From positions 271,553-335,552 of the IMG/VR virus record IMGVR_UViG_3300031957_002643: a stretch of DNA of 64,000 nt, one strand, 5' to 3'. Positions 2,553-52,281 of the stretch are shown here, in pieces. Numbering within the stretch: the first letter of the stretch is position 1; every line of letters starts with the position of its first letter. Made by a program: the position numbers and the translations under genes. Below the pieces are notes generated by a model, which saw only the letters and a program-made list of their open reading frames with translations, searched no databases and had not been told where the DNA came from.

Positions 2553-2637
2553 GGGGATGTGGCGGAACTGGTAGACGCGACGGATTCAAAATCCGTTTCC
2601 TTATGGAGTGGGGGTTCGAGTCCCTCCATCCCTACCA
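2553..2637 (+). tRNA. trnL: tRNA-Leu (CAA)
   Basis: GGGGATG/CATCCCT acceptor, ACGGA-TTCAAAA-TCCGT anticodon arm, long variable arm, GGTTCGAGTCC, encoded CCA. Confidence 0.95.
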
Positions 2638-3839: not shown

Positions 3840-3930
3840 GGATAGGTGGCTGAGTGGCTTAAGGCGCTCCCCTGCTAAGGGAGTGGGCACATTGTGTGTC
3901 CCGTGGGTTCAAATCCCACCCTATCCGCCA
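3840..3930 (+). tRNA. trnS: tRNA-Ser (GCT)
   Basis: GGATAGG/CCTATCC acceptor, CTCCC-CTGCTAA-GGGAG, long variable arm, encoded CCA. Confidence 0.95.
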
Positions 3931-4604: not shown

Positions 4605-4976
4605 TTAGATAAGCATTTTCAGGTTGCTTAGTGTTTCTTCACGGTCTGCCGGATCAATCGGACCAATTCCCAGACAGGTCACAGTCGGTTCATTGAATAC
4701 AGTACGACCAGCATCTTTTACCAAAGATACACCACATTTCTTTTTGTAAAGATCAAATAACTCGAACAATTCTTTTGTGGTTTCAACTGCGAGTGTGATT
4801 TTCACTGCGGACTGGCTGTCCTTATATTGGGTTGCAAGTTCCGGTGTTCGTTCCAAAGCATCCCAATAAGCATGTAGGTAGGCATGCCCGGCTTGTGCGG
4901 CCAGTTTACCTCTGTTGCCGTTCATGGCCTTCAGTGCTTCTTTACTGACGACACAATAGATTTTCAATTCACTCAT
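4605..4976 (-). CDS. pth2: Peptidyl-tRNA hydrolase type 2 (Pth2)
   Basis: GKLAAQAGHA, KITL, VKDAGRT and TCLGIGP are PTH2 family motifs; GAGGAG SD before MSELK. Confidence 0.9.
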   Translation of the reverse strand: MSELKIYCVVSKEALKAMNGNRGKLAAQAGHAYLHAYWDALERTPELATQYKDSQSAVKITLAVETTKELFELFDLYKKKCGVSLVKDAGRTVFNEPTVTCLGIGPIDPADREETLSNLKMLI

Positions 4977-4994
4977 TTTGGTCTCCTCATATGA

Positions 4995-5018
4995 GAATGG
5001 GGACCGAAGTCCCCATTC
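4995..5018 (-). other. 10-bp cUUCGg hairpin between rsr and pth2
   Basis: GAATGGGGAC-TTCG-GTCCCCATTC on the minus strand; no U-tract, so possibly a stabiliser or processing site. Confidence 0.6.
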
Positions 5019-5026
5019 CAATCAGC

Positions 5027-6643
5027 TTAGCGAACAAAGTCCGCCATAACGTTTGGTGCATTGGAATCAAATCCAACAACGTCGAGCATGCCCGGATCAT
5101 CAGGATTTGCAATCGTGAAGCCCGTTGAGGTCATGCCAACAACGATGAGCTTCGCATCGATGCCCATCTTGCGACGGTAATCACGAAGCGCTTCGTGTGG
5201 ATGGATATTACCTGCCCAAGTTTCATTATCCGTGTAGATAACGAAAGCATCAGCTTCGATCTTGTTTTCCATTGCGTAAAGCATTGGAGCAGCACAATCA
5301 GTTCCACCGAATGGAAGATTGCTGATCTTACGGATAACACCATCAAGTGTTGATGCACGACCAAAGTCAAGCGGAGTTACCGCATTAGAGCCACGGTAAG
5401 ACGAATAACGCGAACCACTGGTAAAACCGACAGTGTGTGTAACTGGTTCGGTCTTCATAGTGATAAGTGCCATTGCCGCAGATGCGTCACGTGGCGTGAT
5501 GTTTGAATTCATGATGTTCGAAAACGTCATAGAACCTGAAACATCAAGCGCAAGAAGATGACGCTTTCCAGTCGGAACAACATTCTTGAAAGAAAGCTTG
5601 AATGCATCTTCAAGTGCAGACACAATGTTTCCATTGACCTTCCACGTGTTGCTTCCACGGAAACCACGACCAGACTTATACGTTGTGAGTGCAAGAAGCA
5701 CCGCAAACGGATGAATCATCGAATCGTGAAGCGTCTTCTGATCCGTGAGCCGACGAACTGCCTCCTGTTCAAACTTGGACATCGGCTTGAAAAGATTAAT
5801 CTTTTCAGAAGACATGTTGCCAAGATTTTTGATCATAGCAGTCATCGGCATCTTTTCGAAAAGTGCTTCCCATACCTTTGGATCATTAAGAGCCTCGGTC
5901 GGAAGTGCTTCACGTGGAAGATTTGCTTCACGGATAAGGCCCGGAAGTTCCTTCACAGATGCAGTCTTTGCTTCTTCGTATGCCTTGATGATTGGCGGAA
6001 GCGTTTCGGTATCAACCGGGCGACCACAAATCCAATCAAAGATCACGCGACGTTCTGCTTCTGGCGTCTTTGGATGAGAAAGACGAAGAAGGTCACGGTG
6101 CGTCCAACCATCACGTTGACGATACTTGACCGCTTGGTAAGCGACCTTGTTTGCATCAACTTCGGTATACCAGTTCGCAACTGCACGCTTAAGCGCACGT
6201 CCCCAACCACGGAACTGTTCGACAAATTCCGCGTAATGGAAAAGATGCGTACCAATGCGTGCAACCTTTGGAAGTGCCGCGAGCGCATATGCACGAGTCT
6301 TGTCATCTTGTGCAGCCGAAGCCATAGCAAGAGCGAAAAGAGCAGCATCATTACGGTATGCACGACCGTTCGTGGACACGTCAACAATCATATCGACAGC
6401 ACGAATACCGTCAGAATCAATTGCCTTCTGTACTGCCGAAGCGTTAGCTACGGTAAGTTCACGAGACGATGCGTAGTAGGTTGGTGCATCAGAACCGAGC
6501 ACAAGGAAGCGCTCAAGGCGACCGAACTCATCAAGTGTGAATGAGAAACCGCCAGCATTGTTCTTGGATTGCTTTGGGGAAGCCGCTTCATTTTGCGGCG
6601 TAACGCGATTGCGCGTTCCAACATTACGGTAAGCTTTAGACAT
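5027..6643 (-). CDS. rsr: Ro60 / Rsr TROVE-domain RNA-binding protein
   Basis: NNAGGF, RLERFLVLGS..TYY, KYRQRDGWTHRDLLRL and MPMTAMIKNLG, plus vWA motifs LALDVSGSM, GGTDCAAPM and IYTDNETW. Confidence 0.95.
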   Translation of the reverse strand: MSKAYRNVGTRNRVTPQNEAASPKQSKNNAGGFSFTLDEFGRLERFLVLGSDAPTYYASSRELTVANASAVQKAIDSDGIRAVDMIVDVSTNGRAYRNDAALFALAMASAAQDDKTRAYALAALPKVARIGTHLFHYAEFVEQFRGWGRALKRAVANWYTEVDANKVAYQAVKYRQRDGWTHRDLLRLSHPKTPEAERRVIFDWICGRPVDTETLPPIIKAYEEAKTASVKELPGLIREANLPREALPTEALNDPKVWEALFEKMPMTAMIKNLGNMSSEKINLFKPMSKFEQEAVRRLTDQKTLHDSMIHPFAVLLALTTYKSGRGFRGSNTWKVNGNIVSALEDAFKLSFKNVVPTGKRHLLALDVSGSMTFSNIMNSNITPRDASAAMALITMKTEPVTHTVGFTSGSRYSSYRGSNAVTPLDFGRASTLDGVIRKISNLPFGGTDCAAPMLYAMENKIEADAFVIYTDNETWAGNIHPHEALRDYRRKMGIDAKLIVVGMTSTGFTIANPDDPGMLDVVGFDSNAPNVMADFVR

Positions 6644-6699
6644 TTTCCTTCTCCTTTACGTCTTTTGTGAACTAAGGATTAGGACGAGTCAAGAGGGTT

Positions 6700-6765
6700 G
6701 AATGAACATGTTAGTTGCGGTGGGTGTTTCATCGAAAAAGATAACCCATTGCATCCGGCTCATTC
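6700..6765 (-). ncRNA. Short Y-RNA-like element (copy A)
   Basis: 5' GAAUGAGCCGGAUGCAAUGGGUUAUC pairs with 3' GUUCAUUC; sits in the rsr leader. Confidence 0.75.
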
Positions 6766-6775
6766 AAATTTCATA

Positions 6776-6945
6776 CAGTTGTACCTTAGAAGGATGGACG
6801 TGTTTTTGAAAAACGACGTTTAGACGCTCTAACCGTTGAGCTACCGGCCCATAAATGGTGGGCCAGACAGGATTCGAACCTGTAACCTTCCCTTTGTAAG
6901 AGGATAACCGTCTCTCAGCCGGTCCATCCTTCTAAGATACAACTG
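6776..6945 (-). ncRNA. YrlA-like Y RNA with circularly permuted tRNA module
   Basis: 24-bp terminal stem, GGUUAUC motif, then T arm (CAGGUUCGAAUCCUG), loop-closed acceptor GGCCCA-CCAUUUA-UGGGCC and D arm (UAGCUCAACGGUUAGAGC). Confidence 0.88.
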
Positions 6946-7079
6946 GACGAATGTGTTTGCGACTAGGGGGTGTTGAGACCAATGCTTCTACCAATTCAGC
7001 CACACCCAACAATGTGTTGAGTGACAGGATTCGAACCTGCACTTCTCGGTTTTGATAACCCTATGTCTCCGACTCGTCC
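6945..7079 (-). ncRNA. Second YrlA-like Y RNA with circularly permuted tRNA module
   Basis: GGACGAGU/AUUCGUCC terminal stem, GGGUUAUC, T arm GCAGGUUCGAAUCCUGU, closed acceptor CACUCAAC..GUUGGGUG and D arm UGGCUGAAUUGGUAGAAGC. Confidence 0.85.
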
Positions 7080-7105
7080 GAAATCTTTTGTTCCTCCCAT
7101 TGATT

Positions 7106-7172
7106 GAATGAACATGTTAGTTGTGATGGATGTTCATCATTACCAAGATAACCCACCGCATCCGGCTCATTC
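7106..7172 (-). ncRNA. Short Y-RNA-like element (copy B)
   Basis: Near-duplicate of 6700-6765 (identical 18-nt and 15-nt ends); 5' GAAUGAGCCGGAUGCGGUGGGUUAUC. Confidence 0.75.
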
Positions 7173-7188
7173 GTTGTTCCGTGATATA

Positions 7189-7214
7189 CTTATAGAGGAT
7201 AATAGGGGTGTCAA
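7189..7214 (-). promoter_or_regulatory. Putative promoter for the Y RNA-rsr-pth2 operon
   Basis: TTGACA and TATAAG match this phage's motif, but the spacer is an atypical 14 nt. Confidence 0.4.
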
Positions 7215-7296: not shown

Positions 7297-7373
7297 AGCG
7301 GGGTGGAGCAGTCCGGTAGCTCGTCAGACTCATAATCTGAAGGTCGTAGGTTCAAATCCTGCCCCCGCACCCA
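7297..7373 (+). tRNA. trnM: tRNA-Met (CAT), initiator-like body
   Basis: Body closely matches tRNA-fMet, with a 1:72 mismatch; anticodon arm TCAGA-CTCATAA-TCTGA; encoded CCA. Confidence 0.9.
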
Positions 7374-7714: not shown

Positions 7715-8458
7715 ATGAGAATTCTTTCATCCTTCAGTGATTATTATGATGCAGGTATTGCTTACGGTGTTGATCGCGAATTGACGTTTGTTCGTGAAAC
7801 GTCAACTCATATGGTTGATATTCCCCGAGAAGCAAAAAATATTGGATGGCGCGTCATGATCGATCATGAGCGTGGTCGCAGACGCTTTAAGGATCAAGAT
7901 AGATGGAATTATAGAAGTCAACATTATTTGCACTTTTGTGGTAAGATTTATCCCTTCTATTATTTTGATATGATCAAATATAGAGACCCGAAGAATGGTA
8001 GAGTATTTGAGGTCAATGGTGCACTAAACGCTCATCGTAATATGGTCTCTTATGATGAAGTTTCTAGAAATAGAATTTTCATCTGGAACGAAGAAACTGC
8101 TCTGACTTATTTTGAACCGGGGAAACAAGACTGGTACAATAAGTTCGATTATTCCCAAGAATGGAATGTAATTTCAGATGATCGGTTGAATCGAAAATAC
8201 AACTCACCAGTTGTATTGGAGTACATTGGACGTAATGCTGGGCGTAGAATCGATTTGGTTGTCAATCCGTGTTTGAAGGATATGAACTTCAAAGATGTGA
8301 TTGATCCATATACTGCTTTTCAAGAAGTAAGCATGTATTTGGCCATGTTGCAAAATCCTGAAGACAAGGATTTGGACCCGGCAGCAACCGATGTCGAAAA
8401 AATCCGCCAACATGGAATGGATGAGAAATATGGTTTCCGCAAACCACCATCAAAATGA
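7715..8458 (+). CDS. Conserved large-phage hypothetical protein
   Basis: F.DYYD, FCGKIYP, DPYTAFQE and HG.D...FRK motifs typical of jumbo-phage hypotheticals. Confidence 0.8.
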   Translation: MRILSSFSDYYDAGIAYGVDRELTFVRETSTHMVDIPREAKNIGWRVMIDHERGRRRFKDQDRWNYRSQHYLHFCGKIYPFYYFDMIKYRDPKNGRVFEVNGALNAHRNMVSYDEVSRNRIFIWNEETALTYFEPGKQDWYNKFDYSQEWNVISDDRLNRKYNSPVVLEYIGRNAGRRIDLVVNPCLKDMNFKDVIDPYTAFQEVSMYLAMLQNPEDKDLDPAATDVEKIRQHGMDEKYGFRKPPSK

Positions 8459-8987: not shown

Positions 8988-9365
8988 ATGAAAATTGATC
9001 GTCTATTTGAAGAAACCGTGAAACTCTCCGACATGTATGATGTCGATGATCTGCATGATGATGCAGAAATCCTGTATCATTACATCGATCCAGACCAGTT
9101 GGATGATGAATTCGAAGTTAAAGAATTATCTTTTGATGAAGCCAAGAAATTAAAAACGCCTCGTGGTGATATGACTGTTTGGCAAGCGTATAAAGATCAT
9201 GCGATGCCTGAACAGGAAGACATCATCAAAAAGAAATTGAAAAATTATGATTCGGATCGAGTGATTGTTGTTTATGATGATCAGGTTTTAGACGGGAACC
9301 ATCATTTGATTGCATCATTGAAACAAAAACTTGGCGTTCGCCTGATTGATATTAAGACGATCTAA
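8988..9365 (+). CDS. ParB/Srx-like domain protein
   Basis: VIVVYDDQVLDGNHHLIA resembles the ParB N-terminal DG(H/N)HR motif; N-terminal LFE. Confidence 0.55.
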   Translation: MKIDRLFEETVKLSDMYDVDDLHDDAEILYHYIDPDQLDDEFEVKELSFDEAKKLKTPRGDMTVWQAYKDHAMPEQEDIIKKKLKNYDSDRVIVVYDDQVLDGNHHLIASLKQKLGVRLIDIKTI

Positions 9366-9849
9366 TTTTCATCCACAATTCACCGAGCACATTGTACCCA
9401 ACCCAATTATCACCTTCTCTGGCAGCGCCCCAAAACTTCCCGCTACCATGAGGACGACTGGTGACATCTTCAATTAATCGTCTTTCTCCGGTTTCGGCCA
9501 ACATATTCATGAGTTCTTCATGCTGTTGGACCTTCAACATCAAACACAGTTCCATGTTGTCGAGGTCTTCGGTGCCAGTTTGAAGAACAGTCATATGTTC
9601 GGCATTCCCTTTGGCGTAGAATTTTGCCGACATTGGAGACTTGATAGTCTTGAGATGCAGAAAGTGTTCACTTTCAAAAGGAAAGCGCATAGCCTGAAAC
9701 AAATGTTCAGTCGTTGGAAATAGGTGATCTTTGTAAGTGACTGAAAATGCAGCCATATTTTGCATCCAACCAAAAGGAAGTTTCACTTTAGTGAAAGCGA
9801 TGTCATCTTCTTGGCATGGATTAATCGGGTAGTCTGTAAGTTTGCTCAT
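9352..9849 (-). CDS. NADAR (DUF1768/YbiA) family protein
   Basis: FPTTEHLFQAMRF, SPMSAK, LAETGERRLIE, FWG and G.NVLGELWMKIR. Confidence 0.88.
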   Translation of the reverse strand: MSKLTDYPINPCQEDDIAFTKVKLPFGWMQNMAAFSVTYKDHLFPTTEHLFQAMRFPFESEHFLHLKTIKSPMSAKFYAKGNAEHMTVLQTGTEDLDNMELCLMLKVQQHEELMNMLAETGERRLIEDVTSRPHGSGKFWGAAREGDNWVGYNVLGELWMKIRSS

Positions 9850-10267
9850 CGTTTTCTTCCATGAAATTAAAAATTCGGTCGGACCAGTAGTCATCGAATG
9901 ATGCAAGAGTCCGTGTAAGCTTATATACAGCAGTTGTCAATGCGTCATAATCTTTTGCCTTCCAACTTGTATATGTGCGAGCACAAAGACCAAGTATAGA
10001 CATAGTATAAGCTAATGGGTTATCTTTATTATTTCGATCTTCAATTTCTTTTTTGACCAATTCAAAACGGTCTTCTGTTGTGAAATGGCTTTCATTGTTT
10101 GCCGCAATGCGGAGTGCACAATGAAGCGTCAGGTCAACCAAAATCTGTCTGCGAAAATTAGAACATCCATAGATGATTTTTCTTATTTCTTCCTTTGGAT
10201 CAAATAATTGTTTGATTTCATTATCCAAATCGTCGAGGTCAATATCTATGTCGATTTCATTTTCCAT
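9821..10267 (-). CDS. Hypothetical protein
   Basis: ATG at 10267 (MENEIDID); overlaps the NADAR start. Confidence 0.65.
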   Translation of the reverse strand: MENEIDIDIDLDDLDNEIKQLFDPKEEIRKIIYGCSNFRRQILVDLTLHCALRIAANNESHFTTEDRFELVKKEIEDRNNKDNPLAYTMSILGLCARTYTSWKAKDYDALTTAVYKLTRTLASFDDYWSDRIFNFMEENDEQTYRLPD

Positions 10268-10296
10268 GGCAATATGTATATATCGAATTTTTCTTG

Positions 10297-10325
10297 TTGA
10301 CAAAAGAAATCGAAACACCTATAAG
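10297..10325 (+). promoter_or_regulatory. Sigma70-type promoter for the NAD salvage operon
   Basis: TTGACA-N17-TATAAG. Confidence 0.8.
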
Positions 10326-10381
10326 TATGCATAACGAAGCACCGCCGAAGGTGCATTGACGATAGTAGCGTGGAGTATGCT

Positions 10382-11515
10382 ATGCCTGTGAATGGAAAAC
10401 CATCCATCCGTGATGGGTTCGTGAAAACGAATACACTCGGATATGAAGAAGAATACGATTACCTCGTATTCATTGGAAGATTTCAACCTCTCCATTACGG
10501 GCATATGCGTGTCATTGACATTGCGCTACAACTCTCCAAAAAAGTAGTTCTGCTCGTTGGTTCGTCCAATGTTGGTCGCACCCTGCGTAACCCGTTCACT
10601 TTTCAAGAACGTTACGCCATGATCGCAACACAATACGATCATGCCATCAAGGATGGTCGTCTCATCATCGACTCAATCGATGATATGATGTATGAAGATG
10701 ACCGCTGGATCGAGCAGGTTCAGACCAAAGTCAACAGCAAAGTTGGCGATACCAAAAATGTCGGTCTGATTGGATGTGAGAAAGATCACACCAGTTATTA
10801 TCTCAGCCTCTTCCCGAACTGGCATAATGTCGGTGTGGAATTCAAGGTTCCACTCAACAGTACCGATATCCGCAAGGCTGTGTTCCTTCAGGACAAGCTC
10901 TGGGATGATCGTGGTTTTGGTGAAACGCAACATGCCAAGAATGAATTCTACAAATTCTTGGACAAGGCGTGCCCGCCAGAAATCGCTCAAATCCTTCACG
11001 CATTTATGTACAATCCAACAGCAGAAGAAATTCGTGAAGAATGGAAGTGGATCAATGAATATCGTGCAAAGCGCCAGACCAGCAATTATCCGGTGATTGA
11101 TATCACTGTTGATGCCTGCGTGGTTCAATCTGGTCATGTTCTGGTTGTTCGCCGCAAGAATTATCCGGGCAAAGGTCTTCTTGCCCTTCCGGGTGGTTTC
11201 TTGAATGAAAACGAAATTCGCGAGAAGGGCATGCTTCGTGAATTGCGAGAAGAAACTTGCATCGATCTCTCGGATACTGTCCTTCGCGCAAATATCGTGA
11301 AAGAAAAAGTTTTCGAAGACCCACACCGTTCAGATCGTGGTCGTCTGATTACGACTGCATATCTGATCAAACTTCAGGATCGCCCGGAACTTCCCAAGGT
11401 GAAGGGTGCTGATGATGCAGAGAAAGCATTCTGGTTGCCATTGTCCGAAGTAAAACCTTCGATCTTCTTTGAAGACCATGGATTCATTATCCGAAATCTC
11501 ACGAGCGGAATCTAA
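10382..11515 (+). CDS. nadM: Bifunctional NMN adenylyltransferase / ADP-ribose Nudix hydrolase (NadM-Nudix, NatV-like)
   Basis: FIGRFQPLHYGH (HIGH-type), LNSTDIR, Nudix box GGF.N.NE....GMLRELREE, GADDA, FFEDH. Confidence 0.95.
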   Translation: MPVNGKPSIRDGFVKTNTLGYEEEYDYLVFIGRFQPLHYGHMRVIDIALQLSKKVVLLVGSSNVGRTLRNPFTFQERYAMIATQYDHAIKDGRLIIDSIDDMMYEDDRWIEQVQTKVNSKVGDTKNVGLIGCEKDHTSYYLSLFPNWHNVGVEFKVPLNSTDIRKAVFLQDKLWDDRGFGETQHAKNEFYKFLDKACPPEIAQILHAFMYNPTAEEIREEWKWINEYRAKRQTSNYPVIDITVDACVVQSGHVLVVRRKNYPGKGLLALPGGFLNENEIREKGMLRELREETCIDLSDTVLRANIVKEKVFEDPHRSDRGRLITTAYLIKLQDRPELPKVKGADDAEKAFWLPLSEVKPSIFFEDHGFIIRNLTSGI

Positions 11516-11526
11516 GGAGAATCGTC

Positions 11527-11712
11527 ATGGCAGTTAAAGTAAGTGAAATGTGTAAGCTGACGAGAACTTGTCGCAAGTGTGAAACCGTTCTCGAATTCGA
11601 ATACACGGATATTACAACCCATAAGGTCAATTTTGATTATCTGGGAGATTACGATACCCGAAGAGGTGTAAAGTGTCCCGTATGTGAAAACGTAGTGGAG
11701 GTTACGAAATGA
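11527..11712 (+). CDS. Small Zn-ribbon protein
   Basis: CRKC...CPVC; AAGGAG SD. Confidence 0.7.
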   Translation: MAVKVSEMCKLTRTCRKCETVLEFEYTDITTHKVNFDYLGDYDTRRGVKCPVCENVVEVTK

Positions 11713-12083
11713 CTATCAATTTTGAAGATAAAGAGCGTGCTATCGAACGCGAGCGTCGTGCTATCGAAGATGAACGTGTTCGACTGGCAGAACGCCAAAA
11801 GGCTCTAGAACAGGAAGAAACCGACAACAGAGAACTTGCGGCGAAAATGAAATACGAGAATGATCCTCGTATCCCTATCGCCATCCAGCTTCACACGCTC
11901 ATGTGTAATCACAATCATATTGATGGTTGTAGCTGGTCGTATGAGAGCAAGTGGCACGACTGGAATATTGGTTGGGCACGCAAGGAATATCTCAAAAAGG
12001 CGACCCGTGTCGTGGACATGGCAAATAAATTGGGCATCAAACCTGAAGATGCTCTGGAAATCATCAAAGCAGTGAAAGGGTAA
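11709..12083 (+). CDS. Hypothetical protein
   Basis: Coiled-coil N-terminus, HTLMCNHNHIDGC; ATGA overlap. Confidence 0.75.
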   Translation: MTINFEDKERAIERERRAIEDERVRLAERQKALEQEETDNRELAAKMKYENDPRIPIAIQLHTLMCNHNHIDGCSWSYESKWHDWNIGWARKEYLKKATRVVDMANKLGIKPEDALEIIKAVKG

Positions 12084-12087
12084 TCCA

Positions 12088-13542
12088 ATGCTTAATAATC
12101 CTATTATCGAACTCATTCTCGCAAACAAAGTCATTTCAACGGACAGCTACAAGTTCTCTCACTGGACTCAGTATCCGCCGAATACGACACATGTTTCGAG
12201 CTACATCGAATCCCGTGGTCTTTCCAGTGAAGTGAAAGATGATTGGGAAGATGAAGTCGTTTTCTTCGGCCTGCAAGGCTTCATCAAACGTTACCTCATG
12301 ACGCCGATCACCATGAAGATGGTCGATGAAGCCGAAGAATACTGCAAGGCGCATGGTGAACCATTCAACCGTGCTGGTTTCGAAATCATCGTGAATGAAT
12401 ATGATGGCTTCTATCCTGTTGAAATTGAAGCGGTTCCAGAAGGAACTGTTATGCGTTCTCACAACGCACAGGTTCAAGTCGTCAATACGGATGAACGTCT
12501 GTTTTGGGTGACTTCATTCCTCGAAACGTCTCTTCTCCGTGCAGTGTGGTATCCTTCTACGGTTGCTACTCAAAGCCGCGAAATCAAAAAAGTCATTGCA
12601 TCCTACATGGATGAAACGGCTGGACATCGTGAAGGTCTCGATTTTAAACTCCATGACTTTGGTGCTCGCGGTGTAAGCAGTGCAGAATCCGCTATGATCG
12701 GTGGTTCCTCCCATCTGGTCAATTTCATGGGGACTGATACTGGTGAAGCAAATCTCTGGCTTCGTGCTCTCTATGGTGAAGACATGGCAGCATTCTCTGT
12801 GCCTGCCAGTGAACACAGCACCATGACGAGTTGGGGTGGTCCTGCTGGCGAGGTGGATGCATGTCGCAACATGTTGGAAACCTTTGCTGGTCGCTTCCCG
12901 ATCATCTCTGTGGTTTCTGACAGCTATGACATTTATCGTTGCATCACTGACATTTGGGGTGGTGAACTGTACGAAGATGTCAAGGCGCTTGAAAAGGTCG
13001 GAAGCAAACTTGTTGTTCGTCCTGACTCGGGTGACCCGACGACTGTTCCTGTTGAATGCATCAAGCTTCTGATGGAAAAGTTCGGGTACACCACGAATGA
13101 ACGTGGTTACAAGGTTCTTCCTCCGTTCGTCGGTGTTCTTCAAGGTGATGGTATCAACATCCGTTCGATCCGCCAAATCCTTGAAAACATGAAGAAAGAA
13201 GGCCTGTCCGCCGAAAACATCGTGTTCGGTATGGGTGGTGCCCTTCTTCAAAAGGTTGACCGTGATACCTTGAAGTATGCGATGAAGGCATCTGCTCGAA
13301 AGACTGATGGTGAATGGCATGATGTCTTCAAGCAGCCGGTCACGGATAAGGGCAAGATGTCCAAGAAAGGCCGTCTGGTTGTTGTTGAAACTTTGGGTGT
13401 TGGTGCTCGTGGTCATCTGACTGTTCGTGCCGATGCCATGCTTTCGACCGACAAGAACTTGCTTCGCCCGGTCTATCGTAATGGGGAACTTCTCATGGAT
13501 GATAGCTTGACGGATATCCGCAAACGCGCTAGTATCCGTTAG
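12088..13542 (+). CDS. nadV: Nicotinamide phosphoribosyltransferase (NAMPT/NadV)
   Basis: TDSYKFSH, LHDFGARG, PASEHS, VSDSYD, VRPDSGDP, QGDGI and FGMGGALLQKVDRDT. Confidence 0.95.
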   Translation: MLNNPIIELILANKVISTDSYKFSHWTQYPPNTTHVSSYIESRGLSSEVKDDWEDEVVFFGLQGFIKRYLMTPITMKMVDEAEEYCKAHGEPFNRAGFEIIVNEYDGFYPVEIEAVPEGTVMRSHNAQVQVVNTDERLFWVTSFLETSLLRAVWYPSTVATQSREIKKVIASYMDETAGHREGLDFKLHDFGARGVSSAESAMIGGSSHLVNFMGTDTGEANLWLRALYGEDMAAFSVPASEHSTMTSWGGPAGEVDACRNMLETFAGRFPIISVVSDSYDIYRCITDIWGGELYEDVKALEKVGSKLVVRPDSGDPTTVPVECIKLLMEKFGYTTNERGYKVLPPFVGVLQGDGINIRSIRQILENMKKEGLSAENIVFGMGGALLQKVDRDTLKYAMKASARKTDGEWHDVFKQPVTDKGKMSKKGRLVVVETLGVGARGHLTVRADAMLSTDKNLLRPVYRNGELLMDDSLTDIRKRASIR

Positions 13543-22305: not shown

Positions 22306-22379
22306 GCGGGTGTAGCTCAATGGTAGAGCCACTGCCTTCCAAGCAGAAGACGAGAGTTCGATTCTCTCCATCCGCTCCA
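22306..22379 (+). tRNA. trnG: tRNA-Gly (TCC)
   Basis: GCGGGTG/CATCCGC acceptor, CTGC-CTTCCAA-GCAG, encoded CCA. Confidence 0.93.
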
Positions 22380-22388
22380 AACATTCAT

Positions 22389-22464
22389 GGCGCTGTAGCT
22401 CAGTTGGCAGAGCAGGAGACTCATATTCTCTGTGTCGGCGGTTCGATCCCGTCCAGCGCTACCA
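22389..22464 (+). tRNA. tRNA with CAT anticodon (elongator Met or Ile2)
   Basis: GGCGCTG/CAGCGCT acceptor, GGAGA-CTCATAT-TCTCT, encoded CCA. Confidence 0.9.
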
Positions 22465-29585: not shown

Positions 29586-29661
29586 GCGGGTGTAGCTTAG
29601 TGGCTAAAGCGTCTGGTTGCCATCCAGAAGATCGCGGGTTCGAATCCCGCCATCCGCTCCA
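29586..29661 (+). tRNA. trnG: tRNA-Gly (GCC)
   Basis: GCGGGTG/CATCCGC acceptor, CTGG-TTGCCAT-CCAG, encoded CCA. Confidence 0.93.
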
Positions 29662-33829: not shown

Positions 33830-36800
33830 ATGCATCGTATTGATAGTGAAGGAAACGTCAATAATAGGTTCAGTGAAGGCAATCCGTCTCTTGGTATTGA
33901 AGGTACTAAGGTAACTGCTGATTGGCTCAATGATGTTCAAGAAAATATTGCGTATACCATTGAAGCTGCTGGTTTAACTCTGGAAAAGGGCAACAGTGCC
34001 CTTTTGGCTAATGCTATTCTTACACTGGTCGGTGAAGGTGGTTCGTTCTCCAATCTGACTACCAGAATTAGAGAACTGAATGATTTCTATCTTTATGGTG
34101 CCCGTAATGTGTTCCGTCAGGATGATGAACCTGATGAAGCAACTCAAGGTCCATTCTTCGATAATGACATTTGGATTGAAACCGATCAAAATCCAGAAAA
34201 GGTATGGCTCTGGAATTCACTAACTGAGACATGGGTTGATACGACAGAAGAAGCAGCAGCCCGTGGCATTCTTGCAAAACAAAAACAACAAGCAATTGCT
34301 GATGGTCTAGTACAAATTTTCATTCAAACCGATACGCCTTCAGGCGCATCCGAAGGTGACATCTGGTACAATAAACGAGATGATCTTCTCTTCGTTTATG
34401 AGAATAATATTTGGAACCGCGTATACGACGAGGTTGCCAAACGAAACATTGTTGAATCTGTCATCAACTTTGCTGTCGATAGTGCACAAGGAACAGCAGA
34501 TTCGAAAATTCTAACCTACTATCAAGATGATGCACCAACTGGCTTGACGGCATTGAATGATGGTGACATTTGGTTTGATACGGATAATAACAACAAGCCG
34601 CATCGATATACTCATCCTAATTGGGTTGAAGTTCGTGATGGGCGCATTGAAGACGCAATCGATTACGTCATTCTACAGGGTGCCATCGCAGATGGCACTA
34701 TTTTCGTTTACTTCTCTGAAGATGAACCTGATGCAATCAATCAGGCAGCATTAACACCACCAAATCCTGCACCATCTGAAGGTGATGTCTGGATCGATAT
34801 CACAGATGAAGGTGGCTCTCCTCGCAATGATCCCTATCTCTTTAGTAGTGGGTCTTGGGTATTACAGAATGATCCAGAGTTCCGATCATTATTGCTCAGT
34901 TTTGCAACAGCCAGATCAATTCAGGATGGTGCGGTAACAATTTATTTCAGTCCGACCGAACCAGATGATACCTATATTCCGCCACCGCGTTATGGTGATA
35001 TTTGGTTTGATACTGATGATGTGACCATTGATGATCCTGATGCTGCAAATCCTTCTACTGATCCTCAGATCACAGTTCCAAAATGGGAGCAGTATCGTTA
35101 TGACGGTACAAATTGGGTTCTCATTGAAGATTTCAAACTGAAAATTGTCGAAGCCAATTTGAAAATTGAAGAATTGGCAAGAGCTAGTGCTGATACTGCA
35201 TTGTCCGGCCAGATCACAACGGCAACCACTCGTATTGGTGAAAATGAAGCGACCATTCAGCAATCTCTATTATCGATTAATGGTATTGCCGGTGCATATG
35301 GGGTTCGAACCAATGTCAATAATGAAATTGTTGGTTTCGGTTTCCTCACTGATTATGAAAGAGAAATTGAATTCACCAAAACTGGATCGTTAGATTTCAA
35401 TCCGGGTGATGAAGTTTTTATTGGTGCTGATTGGGCAACAAAAACGTATTCCGCAGTCATCGTCACGGTAGACAATGTGAATGGCACCATGCGTGTCATC
35501 TCGGAAAGTGGAACGTTTGCTACTGGTGTAACAATCACGTCTCGATTGCGCTTGGACGCTAATGCTACTATCGACGCAGGAACCGTAAATCCGACACCGG
35601 GCACGTCAGAATTTGAAATCATCGTTGACAAATTCAAAGTCACCGATGGAACCACTTCTTCGACTCCATTCACTATTAGTGGGGGCGTTGTTTATGTCGG
35701 TGCTCTCGATACAAGCACCCCACAGGTTCAATTCATTGGTGATTTTGCTAATGAGCCAGATACCACATATGCAATCAATAGCATTTATAAGAACACGACA
35801 AACGGTAACACCTATATTCTTGAATATATTTCTGGTTCAAGTGGTCCAAAACAATGGGTGATCTTCCTAGAGAGAGGTGCTAACGCTAGAACGCTTGTTC
35901 TTTCATCCGACTCTCCGGGCTATCTATTTGACTCTAATGCTGTAAGCACGCCATCAAACGCAAGCATCACATTCCGGGTTCAATATCAGGGCCAGTCGAG
36001 TGCAATTGGTTCTGGTGACATTACTGTTTATGATAAAGATGATGTCGCTTTAAGTCCTACGCTCTCAAATACAAATTCAGTAGATAGTACAGTCAATGAC
36101 TCTGGCGGAACAACGCATTCCGGTTATTATGAATTTGATCTTGCATACTCTGAATTCAGTAGTTCCGATTTTCCTCTTACCGTTGAAGTGGACGATGGAA
36201 CTCTTACTGACACATTAGGTATTGTTCGTATCGTTGGTTCAACAGCAAAAACACTATCTATTAATCCAGACTCATTTGTGTTCTTGTTCGAAGATGACGT
36301 TGCAACCGATCCACAAAACTCATCGATCCATTTCCGCATTCAACACCAGAGCTTATCAACAGCACCAACAACTTCTGAGTTGACCATTGAAGATGCTGAT
36401 AGCACCACGTATTCATCAACAAACTTCACATCTGCTGGATCAGGATCAGGCGTAACTAGCTTTGAGCTTCTATGGTCCACAGTATCAGCAGCAACGTTCC
36501 CAATCACGGTTACTGTTACGGATGAGGGAATCACTGATGTTGTTGTTATCCGTCAGCTTATTGGTGGACTAGATGCTATTTCGGGCTTCCTGACAAATGA
36601 ATCACATTTGGTTCCAGCGGACGAATTAGGCAATATCGAATCTGGTGGATTGGATGGTGCAATTGGTACATTCGATGTGTATCAGGGCATCAGTAAAAAG
36701 AATACCGATGTCACTTATAGCGTAGCGTCATCAACCGGCTGTACCGCAACAATTTCAGATGCAGCAGATGGAACTGCTGGTGATTATTCAATCACTGCGA

Positions 36801-39800
36801 TGAGTGCCAATAAGGCAACCGCTGTTTTCCAAGCAGTCATCGATTCAGTTACCATCACAAAAACGATGAGTTTGACCAAATCTTTAGCAGGGGTTTCTGC
36901 TAAAGGTATTGCTCTATTTGCCACTGCACAAACGTTTGAGTTTGATGGCGATGATCAACCAAAAGATGCCGGTGCCAGTATCACATTGACCACAGTGCGA
37001 ACAGGGCTTTCGGGCATCACGTGGTCTGCTGTTGATGAAAATGATGATCCGGTTTCTCTTTCGGGAACCGGTGATGACACTCGAACGTTATCTATTGGTA
37101 ACTTCGGATCATCTCAATACGTCACTGTGACCGTTACTAAAGTTGATGGTGGTGACACTTATACGGATAAAATTCGTGTCGTGCGATTGGTCGAAGGTAG
37201 TAGCTCTGTCCAAGTAGTTCTGTCCAACGAAGCACATACTTTCTTCGCAGACGAAAATGGTGACATCTCTTCTGGTGATTTTGATTCTGGCAATTGCACA
37301 ATTTCAGTATATCGCGGAACTGCACAAATTTCATACAATGCATCTCCAACAAACAACACGTTTAGATTCGGAACAATCACTGCTTCGGCAGGTGTCACAC
37401 AAGATGGAACTGAAGTTGCACCAGAAGTAGGCATTTCTGCAATGACCAACTTGTTTGGTTATCTGGATGTTCCGGTCATTTATCGCGACAATGCTGGAAC
37501 AGATACGACTTATACCCGTAGAATTTCATATGTGAAATCGAGAGAAGGCGAAAAAAGTAGATCACTTCAACTTTACGGCAGTGATCAAGTATTCAGATTT
37601 GATGGCGATGATGATCCAATCGATGCGGGCCAAACTATCACGGTTACCGCGTTCAAGCAAAATCTTGGAACTCTAACGTTTGCTGCTGAAGATGATAGTG
37701 CAGTAGATGTTACCGCAGATTTGACCGGATCGGGCGACAGTAGAACCCTATCAATTACTGACTTTGGTGATGCTGAATTCGTTCGGGTGACTGCTTCTGC
37801 GGATTACACCGTCAACGGAAGCACCGAAACCGTAACAGATACTTTCACGATTTATAGAATTCGTGGTGCAAAAGCAGCGGTGTCTGTAATTCTTACCAAC
37901 GAATCTCATACCTTCTTTGCAGGACCAGATGGAAATATTGACAATGCATTGTTTGATGCAGGCAATTGTACTATTCGTGTTTTCCGTGGAGCAGAAGAAA
38001 TTTCTTACAATGGAACTCCAACCAATAATACATTCCGTTTCGGAACAATTGTCGCTTCTTCTGGTTTAACTCTTGACGGAACGGAAATAGCCCCAACTGT
38101 TGGTCTCACTGCTATGGAAGAAGATAGTGGAACTTTGACGGTTCCGGTTATCTATCGCGATCCAAACGGAAATGATGAGACCTATAATCGTGTGATTTCA
38201 TATTCGAAGGCAAAGGTTGGTGCACAGGCCCGTGGTCTGAGTATGAATGCCACTTCTCAAGTATTCAGATTTGATGGCGAAGGCGTAGCCATCAATGGTG
38301 CTGACACGATCACCTTTACAACACTCAGAACACTCTTGGGAACAGCACCTACGTGGGCGGCTATTGATGATCAAGGCGGCAATATCGCCCTTACCACGGT
38401 TGACGATGACACACGTAGATTGACGATTACCAACTTCGGAACGTCCCAATGGGTCCGCGTATCAGCCGAAGTCACGACGAGCATTGATGGTAACCCTGTC
38501 ACCTATAGAGATTACATTACCGTTGTTAGATTGCAGCGTGGACAGGATGCAATTACTGCTATTATCGAAAATGAAACACACGTCTTCCCTGCTGATGAGG
38601 ATGGTGTTGTTTCTGATTATTCTACAGGCGATACGCTTGTTCGGGTATTTCTTGGCGATACCGAAGTTTCATATGGTGTCAACAATGAACAATTCCGTTT
38701 TGGTACGATTACGCCAACAAATGTTCAGGATGCAGAGCTAACCCCGCCTGAAGTTGGTATTTCGAATATGACGGCTGATACTGGTCGTTTGAGATTACCA
38801 ATCATCTATAAAGATGCATCTGGTAATGATACGACTGTATACAAAGAAATCACTTATACTAAATCTCGTGCGGGGGTTGCAGCTAGAAATCTAAGATTGT
38901 TCCCATCTGCATTCGTTTTCGAATTTGATTCTGATGACAATGCCATCAACAATTCTGACGAAATCACCTTCACTGCCATTGCCACGAATGTTACTGGACT
39001 TTCATTTAGTGCAGTTGATCAAACCGACACACCAGTTAATCTCTCTGTGGTTTCAAATGTTGCGACATTGGCGATTACGGATTTCGATGATGCGGAAAAT
39101 GTAACAGTAACAGTAACCGGTACTTCAACAGTCAACGGAAGCACTGTTAATTTTAGTGATAGTGCTACGATTGTGAGATTGCGAGAAGGCGGTGGTGGTG
39201 CCAGTGTCGTTCTCACGAATGAGTCTCACACTTTCTATGCTGATGAGGAAAATGAAGTTCTACCTTCTGAGTATGCTGGTGGTAATTCGGTTATCAAGGT
39301 CTACGTTGGAACTTCAGAAATCAGTTATAATGCAACTCCAACGAACGGAACATGGCGTTTGGGGAGTATAACGGAAACCAATGTCACTAGGAACGGTGGA
39401 TTGAGTCTTCCGACTATTGGTATTTCCGATTTCGAAAAGGCATCGAACACAGGATCACTTGCGATCAATGTCATTTATCGTGACAATAATGGCAATGACA
39501 GAACGATCCCACGCCTGTTGACATATTCCAAATCAAAAGCTGGTACCGATGCTAGATCACTTAGGTTGATCGCAACTTCCCAGCTATTCAACTTCGACAC
39601 AGCCGGACAGCCAATCGACAGTGGTGATGAAATCACATTCAATGCCGTTCGTCAGTTCATTGATGGATCAGCGGTTTGGTCTGCTGTTGATGATCAGGGT
39701 GGAAACCCTTCTCTTACTCCGGGTGCGAACGGTGATGAGAAAGTATTAACTATTGGTGATTTTGGTACGGCTGAAAGTGTCGTTGTTTCCGTATCAGCAA

Positions 39801-51685: not shown

Positions 51686-51762
51686 CTAGGCGTAGCTCAG
51701 TCAGGCAGAGTACCGGTTTTGGAAACCGGGGGTCGTTGGTTCAAATCCAACCGTCTAGACCA
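51686..51762 (+). tRNA. trnP: tRNA-Pro (TGG)
   Basis: CTAGGCG/CGTCTAG acceptor, CCGGT-TTTGGAA-ACCGG, encoded CCA. Confidence 0.92.
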
Positions 51763-51778
51763 AACGTTCTAAAACCAT

Positions 51779-51852
51779 CAGGGTATAGCTTAGTGGTAGA
51801 GTATCGCACTCGGAATGCGAGGGCGAAGGTTCGATTCCTTCTACCCTGACCA
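51779..51852 (+). tRNA. trnP: tRNA-Pro (CGG)
   Basis: CAGGGTA/TACCCTG acceptor, TCGCA-CTCGGAA-TGCGA, encoded CCA. Confidence 0.92.
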
Positions 51853-51877
51853 AAAATAGAGGTAAAGATGAATAACG

Positions 51878-52111
51878 GTGGTTAACATGATCGATATCAA
51901 AAGAGCCGTCTCGAACGAGAATACAGTTGAATTCCAATACTACTTTGATGGTAGTCTTTGGTACAAAGAAATCAGTGGTGTAGTTTTTCCTGTCCCGGTA
52001 GAGGATATTGGAACAGCGACATTTAATAGAACAGAGAAAGCACTTCTCATGATGCGTTACATGCGGAAGTATAACAAAATGAAAGAGGAAAGTATGAATA
52101 CTGGTGCTTGA
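51878..52111 (+). CDS. Conserved large-phage hypothetical protein
   Basis: LWY...FPVPVEDIGTATF...KA..MRY motif; GAGG SD. Confidence 0.75.
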   Translation: MVNMIDIKRAVSNENTVEFQYYFDGSLWYKEISGVVFPVPVEDIGTATFNRTEKALLMMRYMRKYNKMKEESMNTGA

Positions 52112-52117
52112 TCTTAA

Positions 52118-52193
52118 TGGGGGATAGCTCAATTGGTAGAGCATTCGGTTTTGGTCCGAAAGGTTGCAGGTTCGAGTCCTGCTCCCCCAGCCA
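52118..52193 (+). tRNA. trnQ: tRNA-Gln (TTG)
   Basis: TGGGGGA/TCCCCCA acceptor, TTCGG-TTTTGGT-CCGAA, encoded CCA. Confidence 0.93.
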
Positions 52194-52200
52194 AATTATT

Positions 52201-52281
52201 CCAACCCTCGTCTAGCTGGTAGGATGCCACACTCTGACTTTGACTCAGGAGATTTAGGTTCGATGCCTAAAGGCGCAGCCA
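52201..52281 (+). pseudogene. Chimeric pseudo-tRNA-Gln
   Basis: D arm, TTG anticodon arm, T arm and CCA are present, but the acceptor halves do not pair and extra bases carry a second CTG loop. Confidence 0.65.

What the first reader, a model, noticed from the sequence alone, without database searches (positions are those of the whole stretch)
4605..7214. Phage Ro60 operon with four Y-RNA-like elements and Pth2
Seen: one minus-strand unit of promoter, four RNA elements sharing G(A/U)xCGG..GGUUAUC and a terminal stem, rsr, a UUCG hairpin and pth2. Known: bacterial Ro60 (Rsr) binds Y RNAs encoded next to it and in Deinococcus is tethered to PNPase. YrlA RNAs mimic tRNA and have been reported in some phages, so the core system is not new. 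Four Y RNAs of two architectures in one phage leader, coupled to Pth2 rather than RtcB, is unusual. Inference: a phage RNA-quality-control or tRNA-decoy module.
Basis: partly seen in the sequence, partly recalled or inferred. Interest (0 to 1): 0.85.

Follow-up and report, generated by a model that had tools for sequence, protein, structure and literature searches.

The report
Phage Ro60 gene with four Y RNAs
A marine jumbo phage carries the RNA-binding ring protein Ro60 behind four small structured "Y RNA" genes, a real and well-conserved example of a known system, while the neighbouring peptidyl-tRNA hydrolase gene is only a chance neighbour.

Summary
On the minus strand of 4605-7214 lie a promoter-like site, four structured RNA elements, rsr (Ro60), a hairpin and pth2.

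The four elements are Y RNAs of two kinds. Two are short hairpins. Two are YrlA-type RNAs with a permuted tRNA-like domain. All four share one Ro60-binding module, which occurs nowhere else in the 64-kb window.

Related uncultivated jumbo phages (Ro60 63-78% identical) keep the same promoter and the same array order. Base-pair covariation there is strong.

- Arrays of 3-5 Y RNA modules next to Ro60 are common in viral contigs.
- The Pth2 link is not conserved. No pth2 lies within 5 kb of rsr in five of six closest relatives with enough flank. Three close Pth2 homologues have no Ro60 within 5 kb. In relatives rsr ends at a strong terminator.

This is a new member of a known kind, the phage Ro60/Y RNA ribonucleoprotein. 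It probably recruits a host exoribonuclease.

The most interesting residue concerns the short elements. They repeatedly match Rfam's nematode stem-bulge (Y RNA homologue) model, once just over its gathering score, and carry the animal Y RNA motifs. Expression could not be tested.

The parts
7186..7214 (-). Promoter-like site: TTGACA (7214-7209), spacer, TAAGTAT (7192-7186).
   Evidence: Unique in the window. The same TTGAC..TAAGTAT arrangement sits before the Y RNA array in L002, L003, L004, L005, L007 and L010. The generic sigma-70 scan did not call it, because its second hexamer is off-consensus.
7103..7175 (-). Y RNA 1, a short hairpin type (YrlB-like / stem-bulge-like).
   Evidence: Model R1 scores 68.2 bits, E 7e-15. 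MFE is -19.9 kcal/mol, z = -2.0. Covariation of the class: 12 of 17 pairs have compensatory changes and 93.6% of cells are paired, against 73.7% in shuffles.
6942..7082 (-). Y RNA 2, YrlA-type A: closing stem, Ro-binding motif, T arm, 8-bp acceptor-like hairpin, and a D arm resembling that of tRNA-Leu.
   Evidence: R1 scores 36.6 bits across the whole element. The consensus fold with five relatives has 31 pairs, 15 with compensatory changes. In relatives the D arm closely matches that of the phage's own tRNA-Leu. Rfam YrlA gives only 15.1 bits, partial.
6782..6940 (-). Y RNA 3, YrlA-type B: 19-bp closing stem, Ro-binding motif, second stem, V hairpin with a 7-nt anticodon-like loop, T arm, acceptor-like hairpin with an encoded ACCA, and D arm.
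   Evidence: Rfam YrlA scores 40.5 bits, E 2.6e-7. MFE is -57 kcal/mol, z = -4.7. The consensus fold with six relatives has 43 pairs, 29 compensatory, and 96.2% of cells paired against 75% in shuffles.
6697..6768 (-). Y RNA 4, a short hairpin type.
   Evidence: R1 scores 77.9 bits. Rfam nematode sbRNA family RF01656 scores 35.8 bits against a gathering score of 38, E 1.9e-5. MFE is -21.2 kcal/mol, z = -3.9.
5027..6643 (-). rsr, a Ro60 orthologue of 538 aa, with an AAGGAG ribosome-binding site upstream.
   Evidence: Pfam TROVE plus vWA_Ro60. It scores 408 bits to D. radiodurans Rsr (2NVO) and 378 bits to human Ro60. The MIDAS DVSGSM motif is kept. PHROG 850 'RNA-binding protein'.
4994..5019 (-). 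Hairpin with an 11-bp stem and UUCG loop, at the position of the rsr terminator in relatives but with a poor U tract.
   Evidence: -19.4 kcal/mol, z = -4.5. Relatives have stem-loops followed by U runs at this position. The terminator scan did not call it.
4605..4976 (-). pth2, an archaeal/eukaryotic-type peptidyl-tRNA hydrolase of 123 aa. It is a neighbour and probably read through from rsr. It is not a conserved part of the module.
   Evidence: Pfam PF01981, 1.4e-19. The GK..AAQ..HA and DAG.T motifs align with solved Pth2 enzymes. Its synteny is not conserved.
7297..7373 (+). Divergently oriented tRNA-Met(CAT). It is the conserved upstream border of the unit.
   Evidence: ARAGORN and Rfam. 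A tRNA is found at the same position and orientation in L002, L004 and L010. tRNA-like sequence is visible there in L007.

Best explanation
This is a phage-encoded Ro60 ribonucleoprotein module.

One conserved sigma-70-like promoter most likely drives a polycistronic transcript. It carries four Y RNAs in the order short, YrlA-type A, YrlA-type B, short, followed by the rsr mRNA. This transcript and its processing are inferred.

The precursor is probably cut into discrete RNAs, each closed by a long stem. Each RNA carries the Ro60-binding motif, here G-N-C-G-G-A, a one-base variant of the published GNCGAAN0-1G. Binding is inferred.

By analogy with D. radiodurans, S. Typhimurium and Thermus phage phiLo, each Y RNA would bind the outer face of the Ro60 ring through that module. 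Its other end would gate the ring or tether it to a partner, most plausibly the host 3'-5' exoribonuclease PNPase. That would redirect host RNA decay or repair during infection.

The two architectures probably give Ro60 different partners. The tRNA-like domains can engage tRNA-recognising enzymes.

pth2 lies just downstream and is probably transcribed by read-through of a weak hairpin. It is an independent tRNA-recycling gene, not a functional partner.
For: Shown here:
- Ro60 domain content and close similarity to solved Ro60 and Rsr structures.
- All four RNAs share one module that is found only here in the window.
- Strong covariation supports all three RNA folds.
- Promoter, array order and tight spacing are conserved in six related phage contigs.
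- No terminator-like site lies inside the array.
- A terminator follows rsr in relatives.
- Other viral Ro60 loci carry 3-5 such modules.

From the literature:
- Y RNAs lie within 4 kb of rsr on the same strand in 254 bacteria and 22 phages. Every characterised species has at least two. In M. smegmatis and D. radiodurans they are processed from one precursor. The GNCGAAN0-1G and YUAY motifs and the T, AS, D and V stem-loops are described there.
- phiLo Ro60 binds two upstream Y-like RNAs and host PNPase in vitro.
Against: - There is no expression or binding evidence. No RNA run holds this DNA, and the reads laid were only short tRNA-like scraps.
- Rfam YrlA stays below its gathering score for both long elements.
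- The window's motif has G where the published motif has A.
- The partner (PNPase or another) and the benefit to the phage are inferred by analogy only.
- The host is unknown.
Confidence: 0.75

Rival explanations
1. The module is a functional Ro60/Y RNA/Pth2 unit. The tRNA-like domains of the YrlA-type RNAs recruit Pth2, or present peptidyl-tRNA-like substrates to it. Pth2 replaces RtcB as the operon's effector.
For: In this phage pth2 starts 50 nt after rsr on the same strand. There is no room for its own promoter, and the intervening hairpin lacks a good U tract. One relative, L004, has pth2 1.1 kb downstream on the same strand. Pth2 acts on tRNA-shaped substrates, which is general knowledge of the family.
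Against: No pth2 lies within 5 kb of rsr in L002, L003, L005, L007 or L008. In relatives rsr is followed by a strong intrinsic terminator. Three close Pth2 homologues (63-68% identical) have no Ro60 within 5 kb and sit near Thg1 or a CCA-adding-type enzyme instead. Phage Phosso has the two genes 272 kb apart.
Confidence: 0.07
2. The array is mainly a counter-defence device. The tRNA-like Y RNAs act as decoys or sponges for host tRNA-targeting nucleases, or the Ro60 RNP blocks a defence system, rather than performing RNA quality control.
For: The unit sits beside a conserved block encoding NAMPT, an NMNAT-NUDIX protein and NADAR. By general knowledge such genes are linked to countering NAD-depleting or ADP-ribosylating defences. 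A Ro60-like protein of coliphage Bas63 was reported to counter the Ppl defence system. The type B element has a hairpin with a 7-nt anticodon-like loop, which the tRNA model aligns as an anticodon arm at 26.9-28.3 bits.
Against: No defence assay exists for this phage and its host is unknown. The tRNA-like domain has no anticodon arm in the canonical position. The V hairpin is a known, weakly conserved YrlA feature. This reading is compatible with the best explanation rather than exclusive of it.
Confidence: 0.15
3. The two long elements are ordinary or degenerate (permuted or tandem) tRNA genes, and the short ones are chance hairpins. There is then no Y RNA function.
For: The tRNA covariance model scores part of element 3 at 26.9 bits, just under its gathering score of 29. 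Element 3 contains an acceptor 3' strand, ACCA, a 5-nt spacer and an acceptor 5' strand, like the junction of two tandem tRNA genes. The window holds 10 real tRNA genes.
Against: ARAGORN calls no tRNA here. Long closing stems outside the tRNA-like part covary strongly. All four elements share the Ro-binding module and are always next to rsr. The short class has 12 of 17 covarying pairs.
Confidence: 0.03

Closest known systems
Bacterial and phage Rsr (Ro60) with YrlA and YrlB Y RNAs (Chen et al. 2014, PMC4201824; S. Typhimurium, M. smegmatis, mycobacteriophages)
   Same: Y RNAs lie directly upstream of rsr on the same strand. One class has T, acceptor-like and D arms plus a V hairpin. One class is a long hairpin. 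The 5' motif resembles GNCGAAN0-1G, and YUAY (here UUAU within GGUUAUC) follows it. The layout is polycistronic.
   Different: There are four RNAs rather than the two usually described. The window's motif is GNCGGA. Both long elements fall below the Rfam YrlA gathering score. There are two distinct tRNA-like types, one with a tRNA-Leu-like D arm.
Thermus phage phiLo Ro60 with Yrl1 and Yrl2 (PMC12135203)
   Same: It is a phage Ro60 with Y-like RNAs upstream. The proposed role is capture of host PNPase.
   Different: The proteins are very distant: phiLo Ro60 scores only 28 bits against this one. phiLo has two RNAs. Nothing here has been tested biochemically.
D. radiodurans Rsr / Yrn1 / PNPase (the RYPER complex)
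   Same: It is the closest solved Ro60 (408 bits). Several small RNAs are encoded upstream of rsr and made as one precursor together with a tRNA.
   Different: That is a cellular stress-response system. PNPase association is not testable here.
Metazoan Y RNAs and nematode stem-bulge RNAs (Rfam RF01656)
   Same: The short elements have a lower stem with a bulged C. They also have an upper-stem R-U-G / C-A-Y pair set and UUAUC at the start of the loop. They score 31-38 bits on RF01656, and these motifs are described in PMC4726728.
   Different: The loop is far shorter than in sbRNAs. No hit to Rfam Y_RNA was listed at E<=10. The gene context is bacterial-type, and there is no link to eukaryotic DNA replication.
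Salmonella rsr-yrlBA-rtcBA RNA repair operon
   Same: rsr and Y RNAs lie in one unit with an RNA- or tRNA-related enzyme gene downstream.
   Different: Neither RtcB nor RtcA was found next to rsr, nor among the nine other ORFs of at least 230 aa that were scanned. The downstream gene is pth2, and that neighbourhood is not conserved.

Membership tests
Ro60 / Rsr protein family | An N-terminal TROVE (HEAT-repeat ring) domain followed by a vWA domain. | tested here: met
   Pfam TROVE 3.2e-41 and vWA_Ro60 1.2e-66. Full-length alignment to 2NVO, 9NEN and 1YVP.
Ro60 / Rsr protein family | A MIDAS motif (D-x-S-x-S plus downstream T and D) in the vWA domain. | tested here: met
   DVSGSM, GGTDC and TDNET align with the same residues of Rsr and of human and Xenopus Ro60.
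Ro60 / Rsr protein family | Binds Y RNA on the outer surface of a closed ring. | not testable with these tools
   This needs a pull-down or a structure. No structure prediction was run.
YrlA (Rfam RF02553) | Encoded within 4 kb of rsr on the same strand. | tested here: met
   All four elements lie 54-530 nt upstream of rsr on the minus strand.
YrlA (Rfam RF02553) | A GNCGAAN0-1G motif near the 5' end. | tested here: inconclusive
   Window elements 1, 2 and 4 read GNCGGA(N)G, one base off. Element 3 reads ACCGGCUG. Relatives L003, L005, L007 and L010 have exact GNCGAA(N)G in some elements.
YrlA (Rfam RF02553) | T-arm, acceptor-like stem-loop and D-arm in that order, with YUAY before the V region. 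| tested here: met
   Elements 2 and 3 have this order. The UUAU within GGUUAUC corresponds to YUAY.
YrlA (Rfam RF02553) | Score at or above the Rfam gathering threshold of 69 bits. | tested here: not met
   40.5 bits (E 2.6e-7) for element 3 and 15.1 bits for element 2. No phage locus tested reached 69 bits.
Short bacterial Y RNAs (YrlB / Yrn2 type) | [quoted passage not shown] | tested here: met
   Elements 1 and 4 fit.
Nematode stem-bulge RNA family (Rfam RF01656) | Score at or above the gathering threshold of 38 bits. | tested here: not met
   Window element 4 scores 35.8 bits and element 1 was not listed. One orthologue, L007, reaches 38.1 bits. L002 copies score 31-36 bits.
Nematode stem-bulge RNA family (Rfam RF01656) | A bulged-C lower stem, an R-U-G/C-A-Y upper stem and a UUAUC loop motif. 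| tested here: met
   The alignment and structure show these features.
Pth2 (PF01981) | The PTH2 fold with the conserved Lys (GK..AAQ) and Asp (DAG.T). | tested here: met
   Pfam 1.4e-19. The alignment to 2ZV3, 1Q7S and 1WN2 keeps both motifs. That these residues are catalytic is from my own knowledge of the S. solfataricus enzyme.
rsr-rtcBA RNA repair operon | RtcB ligase and RtcA cyclase encoded with rsr. | tested here: not met
   Neighbours on both sides lack these domains. Nine other ORFs of at least 230 aa, out of those in the window, also lack them. Only 64 of 335 kb was searched.
RYPER (Ro60 / Y RNA / PNPase) | Y RNA tethers Ro60 to PNPase. | not testable with these tools
   The host is unknown. 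No PNPase was found among the window ORFs scanned.

The most novel reading that the evidence does not exclude
The short phage Y RNAs are true homologues of animal Y RNAs and nematode stem-bulge RNAs. They share the bulged-C lower stem, the R-U-G/C-A-Y upper stem and UUAUC. This form is widespread beside Ro60 in uncultivated phages. If so, the motifs that animal work ties to DNA replication predate that role. They would serve an ancestral Ro60-linked function, and phages may have carried Ro60 and Y RNA together between lineages.
Probability: 0.3. Interest if true: 0.6.

Novelty: new member of a known kind. Interest (0 to 1): 0.4.

Why it matters
Phage Ro60 is annotated in hundreds of genomes, with 359 GenBank phage records matching it here. 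Its partners and purpose in infection remain largely untested.

This locus and its relatives give a clean comparative set: one promoter, a fixed order of four RNAs of three structural types, and enough covariation to define each fold. That set can improve the YrlA and Y RNA covariance models. The current Rfam YrlA model missed every phage locus tested at its gathering score.

The locus also shows that arrays of 3-5 Y RNAs are normal for phages. That suggests Ro60 is loaded with several adaptors during infection.

The similarity of the short class to animal stem-bulge and Y RNAs bears on whether bacterial or phage Y RNAs and animal Y RNAs share ancestry.

The Pth2 link, which made the finding look special, does not hold.

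Tried and rejected
- Rfam at gathering score found only tRNAs in the window. At relaxed thresholds it gave YrlA and sbRNA matches below their cut-offs.
- A near-identity search of GenBank phages found only tRNA matches, so the phage is not a deposited isolate.
- The IMG/VR protein-pattern scan returned only the source contig.
- Expression could not be tested. No RNA run holds the DNA. Laying four metatranscriptome-labelled runs at 80% likeness gave only 35-90-nt scraps, mostly over the T-arm region, which is uninformative.
- The generic promoter and terminator scan called neither the conserved promoter nor the post-rsr hairpin.
- The idea that pth2 belongs to the module was rejected on synteny.
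- The idea that TTGAC..TAAGTAT is a general promoter motif of this phage was rejected, because it occurs once in the 64 kb.
- Two Wolin-lab reviews (PMC10870794, PMC6047535) were not held.
Only the 26 stretches with Ro60 in the held flank were used.
Full report
**What is there**

Reading the minus strand from 7214 down to 4605 gives, in order:
- a TTGACA / TAAGTAT promoter-like pair, 7214-7186;
- four structured elements at 7175-7103, 7082-6942, 6940-6782 and 6768-6697;
- a ribosome-binding site and a 538-aa ORF, 6643-5027;
- an 11-bp hairpin with a UUCG loop, 5019-4994;
- a 123-aa ORF, 4976-4605.

The large ORF is Ro60: Pfam TROVE 3e-41 and vWA_Ro60 1e-66. It scores 408 bits to D. radiodurans Rsr and 378 bits to human Ro60, with the MIDAS motif intact. 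The small ORF is a PTH2-family peptidyl-tRNA hydrolase (1.4e-19) and keeps the GK..AAQ and DAG.T motifs of solved enzymes. A tRNA-Met gene lies divergently just upstream, at 7297-7373.

The window is part of a 335.5-kb IMG/VR contig. DNA runs labelled seawater metagenome hold the sequence. It matches no GenBank phage except through tRNA genes.

**Are the four elements real RNAs?**

All four share a 5' G-N-C-G-G-(A/C), a GGUUAUC about ten bases later, and a closing stem.

I fetched the closest Ro60 relatives, 55-78% identical at the protein level, on metagenome contigs of up to about 400 kb. In the 63-78% group the upstream non-coding stretch has the same layout: the divergent tRNA, the same TTGAC..TAAGTAT promoter, then the array. 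The array orders are:

| Locus | Order of elements |
|---|---|
| window, L003, L007, L010 | short, type A, type B, short |
| L002 | short, short, A, B, short |
| L004 | short, A, B |
| L005 | a type A that has lost its tRNA-like core, then B, short |

Covariation is strong in all three classes.

| Class | Sequences | Pairs | Pairs with compensatory change | Cells paired | Paired in shuffles |
|---|---|---|---|---|---|
| Short | 14 | 17 | 12 | 93.6% | 73.7% |
| Type A | 6 | 31 | 15 | not computed | not computed |
| Type B | 7 | 43 | 29 | 96.2% | 75.0% |

For the short class and for type B, no shuffle reached the observed covariation score (0 of 500), and partners slid by 1-3 columns collapsed to 35-47% paired.

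A covariance model of the short class (R1) finds exactly the four elements in the 64-kb window and nothing else at E<=1. It spans the long elements end to end. So the four share one stem-plus-motif module, and the long ones carry an insertion.

**What kind of RNAs?**

The insertion in elements 2 and 3 is a T arm (GGUUCGAAUCC), an acceptor-like hairpin and a D arm, in that permuted order. In type B a small hairpin precedes the T arm. This is the YrlA architecture of Chen et al. 2014, with its T, AS, D and V stem-loops. The 5' motif there is GNCGAAN0-1G, and YUAY begins the V region. Here GGUUAUC contains that YUAY.

Several relatives carry the exact published motif. Window elements 1, 2 and 4 have G in place of one A, and element 3 departs further.

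Rfam YrlA matches element 3 at 40.5 bits (E 2.6e-7) and the L007 orthologue at 37.5 bits, both below the gathering score of 69. Element 2 gets only 15 bits. None of the 11 phage loci tested, including GenBank mycobacteriophage, Gordonia and Microbacterium phages, reached the threshold. The model is evidently too narrow for phage versions.

The D arm of type A in relatives is nearly the same as that of the phage's own tRNA-Leu.

The short elements fit the 'long hairpin' second Y RNA described for all characterised bacteria.

**Transcription unit**

The elements are 1-20 nt apart and the last ends 53 nt before the rsr start. No terminator-like site lies among them. In M. smegmatis and D. radiodurans, Y RNAs are cut from one precursor, so the same is the natural expectation here.

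In L002, L003, L004, L005, L007 and L010, rsr is followed at once by a strong stem-loop with a U run. The conserved unit is therefore promoter, Y RNAs, rsr, terminator.

The window has a strong hairpin in the same place but only a poor U tract (UCUCAUAU). pth2 follows 17 nt after it with its own ribosome-binding site. So pth2 is probably expressed by read-through in this phage.

**Is Pth2 part of it?**

No.
- tblastn of Pth2 against all fetched Ro60 loci finds it only in the window's own contig and in L004. In L004 it lies 1.1 kb downstream, with another gene and a tRNA between.
- A longer flank of the L002-type phage (L108) has a weak Pth2 homologue about 8.5 kb away on the other strand.
- From the Pth2 side, three close homologues (63-68% identical) on 126-244-kb contigs have no Ro60 within 5 kb. 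Two of them sit near Thg1 or a CCA-adding-type nucleotidyltransferase.
- In GenBank, Pth2 homologues occur in 48 phage records, mostly Caulobacter and Brevundimonas jumbo phages. Ro60 homologues occur in 359 records, mostly actinobacteriophages.
- The single phage seen with both genes, Sinorhizobium phage Phosso, has them 272 kb apart.
- Both genes were already noted separately in jumbo phages.

**Is four unusual?**

Not among phages. R1 finds 2-3 modules beside Ro60 in a cluster C mycobacteriophage, Gordonia phage GMA2 and Microbacterium phage Big4.

An IMG/VR scan with the motif GCCGRA-N5-TGGGTTATC returned at least 119 stretches. Of these, 26 carry Ro60 in the held flank, 39-100% identical to this one. 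In those loci the number of modules was as follows:

| Modules | Loci |
|---|---|
| 5 | L108 |
| 4 | L036, L135, L066, L090 |
| 3 | seven further loci |

The papers I could read describe one or two Y RNAs per phage. The array size is therefore under-described rather than exceptional.

**How it most likely works**

The following is shown:
- the protein is an intact Ro60;
- the RNAs are conserved, structured and share the motif that Ro60 contacts in other systems.

The following is inferred from D. radiodurans, Salmonella and phiLo:
- each Y RNA binds Ro60 through the bulged stem;
- its distal part gates the ring or tethers it to an effector, with host PNPase the best-documented one;
- several Y RNAs allow several kinds of RNP.

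A counter-defence role is possible. The unit adjoins a conserved block of NAMPT, NMNAT-NUDIX and NADAR genes. A Ro60-like protein of phage Bas63 was reported to counter the Ppl system. Nothing here tests that role.

**The most interesting residue**

The short elements repeatedly match Rfam's nematode stem-bulge RNA family RF01656, the worm homologues of Y RNAs:
- 35.8 bits in the window;
- 31-36 bits for three copies in L002;
- 38.1 bits in L007, just over the gathering score of 38.

The match covers three features:
- the lower stem with its bulged C;
- an upper stem containing R-U-G paired to C-A-Y;
- UGGGUUAUC at the loop start.

These are the motifs that the Y RNA literature lists for vertebrate Y RNAs and sbRNAs. 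That literature also calls bacterial Y RNAs highly divergent and not homologous. Convergence on a Ro60-binding shape cannot be excluded, and I could not compare against animal seed alignments directly.

**Verdict**

The system is a new member of a known kind. The Pth2 coupling is not supported. Expression and binding remain untested.

Noticed in passing
window 6830-6905 (minus strand, inside element 3): After the T arm come a 7-nt acceptor 3' strand, ACCA, a 5-nt spacer (UUUAU), the matching acceptor 5' strand and a D arm. This looks like the junction of two tandem tRNA genes. The L007 orthologue keeps a near-identical junction, but L003 and L010 do not. It suggests YrlA-type RNAs arose from the 3' part of one tRNA gene plus the 5' part of the next. 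It also marks element 3 as a candidate for RNase P cleavage, as in M. smegmatis.
   Followed up: partly
window 9352-13542; also L002-L005 and L007 upstream flanks: A gene block encoding NADAR, an NMNAT-like cytidylyltransferase fused to NUDIX, and NAMPT lies next to the Ro60 unit and is conserved in the relatives. It looks like an NAD-salvage or counter-defence cluster.
   Followed up: partly
window 33830-47437 (+) and 57701-61951 (-): Very large ORFs of 4535 aa and 1416 aa. Neither was examined.
   Followed up: no
window 2553-2637, 3840-3930, 7297-7373, 22306-22464, 29586-29661, 51686-52281: Ten tRNA genes lie in 64 kb, including two Met(CAT), two Pro, two Gln and two Gly.
   Followed up: no
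L014 (Gordonia phage GMA2) 4770-5181 and 5491-5547: Right after its Ro60 gene, Rfam finds a tmRNA (94.6 bits) overlapping an annotated hypothetical ORF, and a Pistol ribozyme (56.8 bits). A long tRNA array follows.
   Followed up: no
L015 (Microbacterium phage Big4) 148-291: The annotated tRNA-Ser(cga) at 155-222 lies inside a match to the Y RNA module model. It may be the tRNA-like core of a YrlA-type Y RNA rather than a tRNA.
   Followed up: no
L005 4653-4700 and 7071-8549: In this relative the type A element is reduced to a short hairpin that keeps the closing stem and motif but has lost the tRNA-like core. An IS605 OrfB / TnpB-like gene sits just downstream of rsr.
   Followed up: no
L008 3185-3467: In a more distant Ro60 phage (55% identity), two Y-module hits are directly followed by an Rfam wcaG RNA motif match (56.2 bits against a gathering score of 42).
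   Followed up: no
window 7715-8458 (+): A 247-aa protein of unknown function (PHROG 4243) is conserved next to the tRNA-Met and Y RNA array in all six close relatives, at 42-47% identity.
   Followed up: partly
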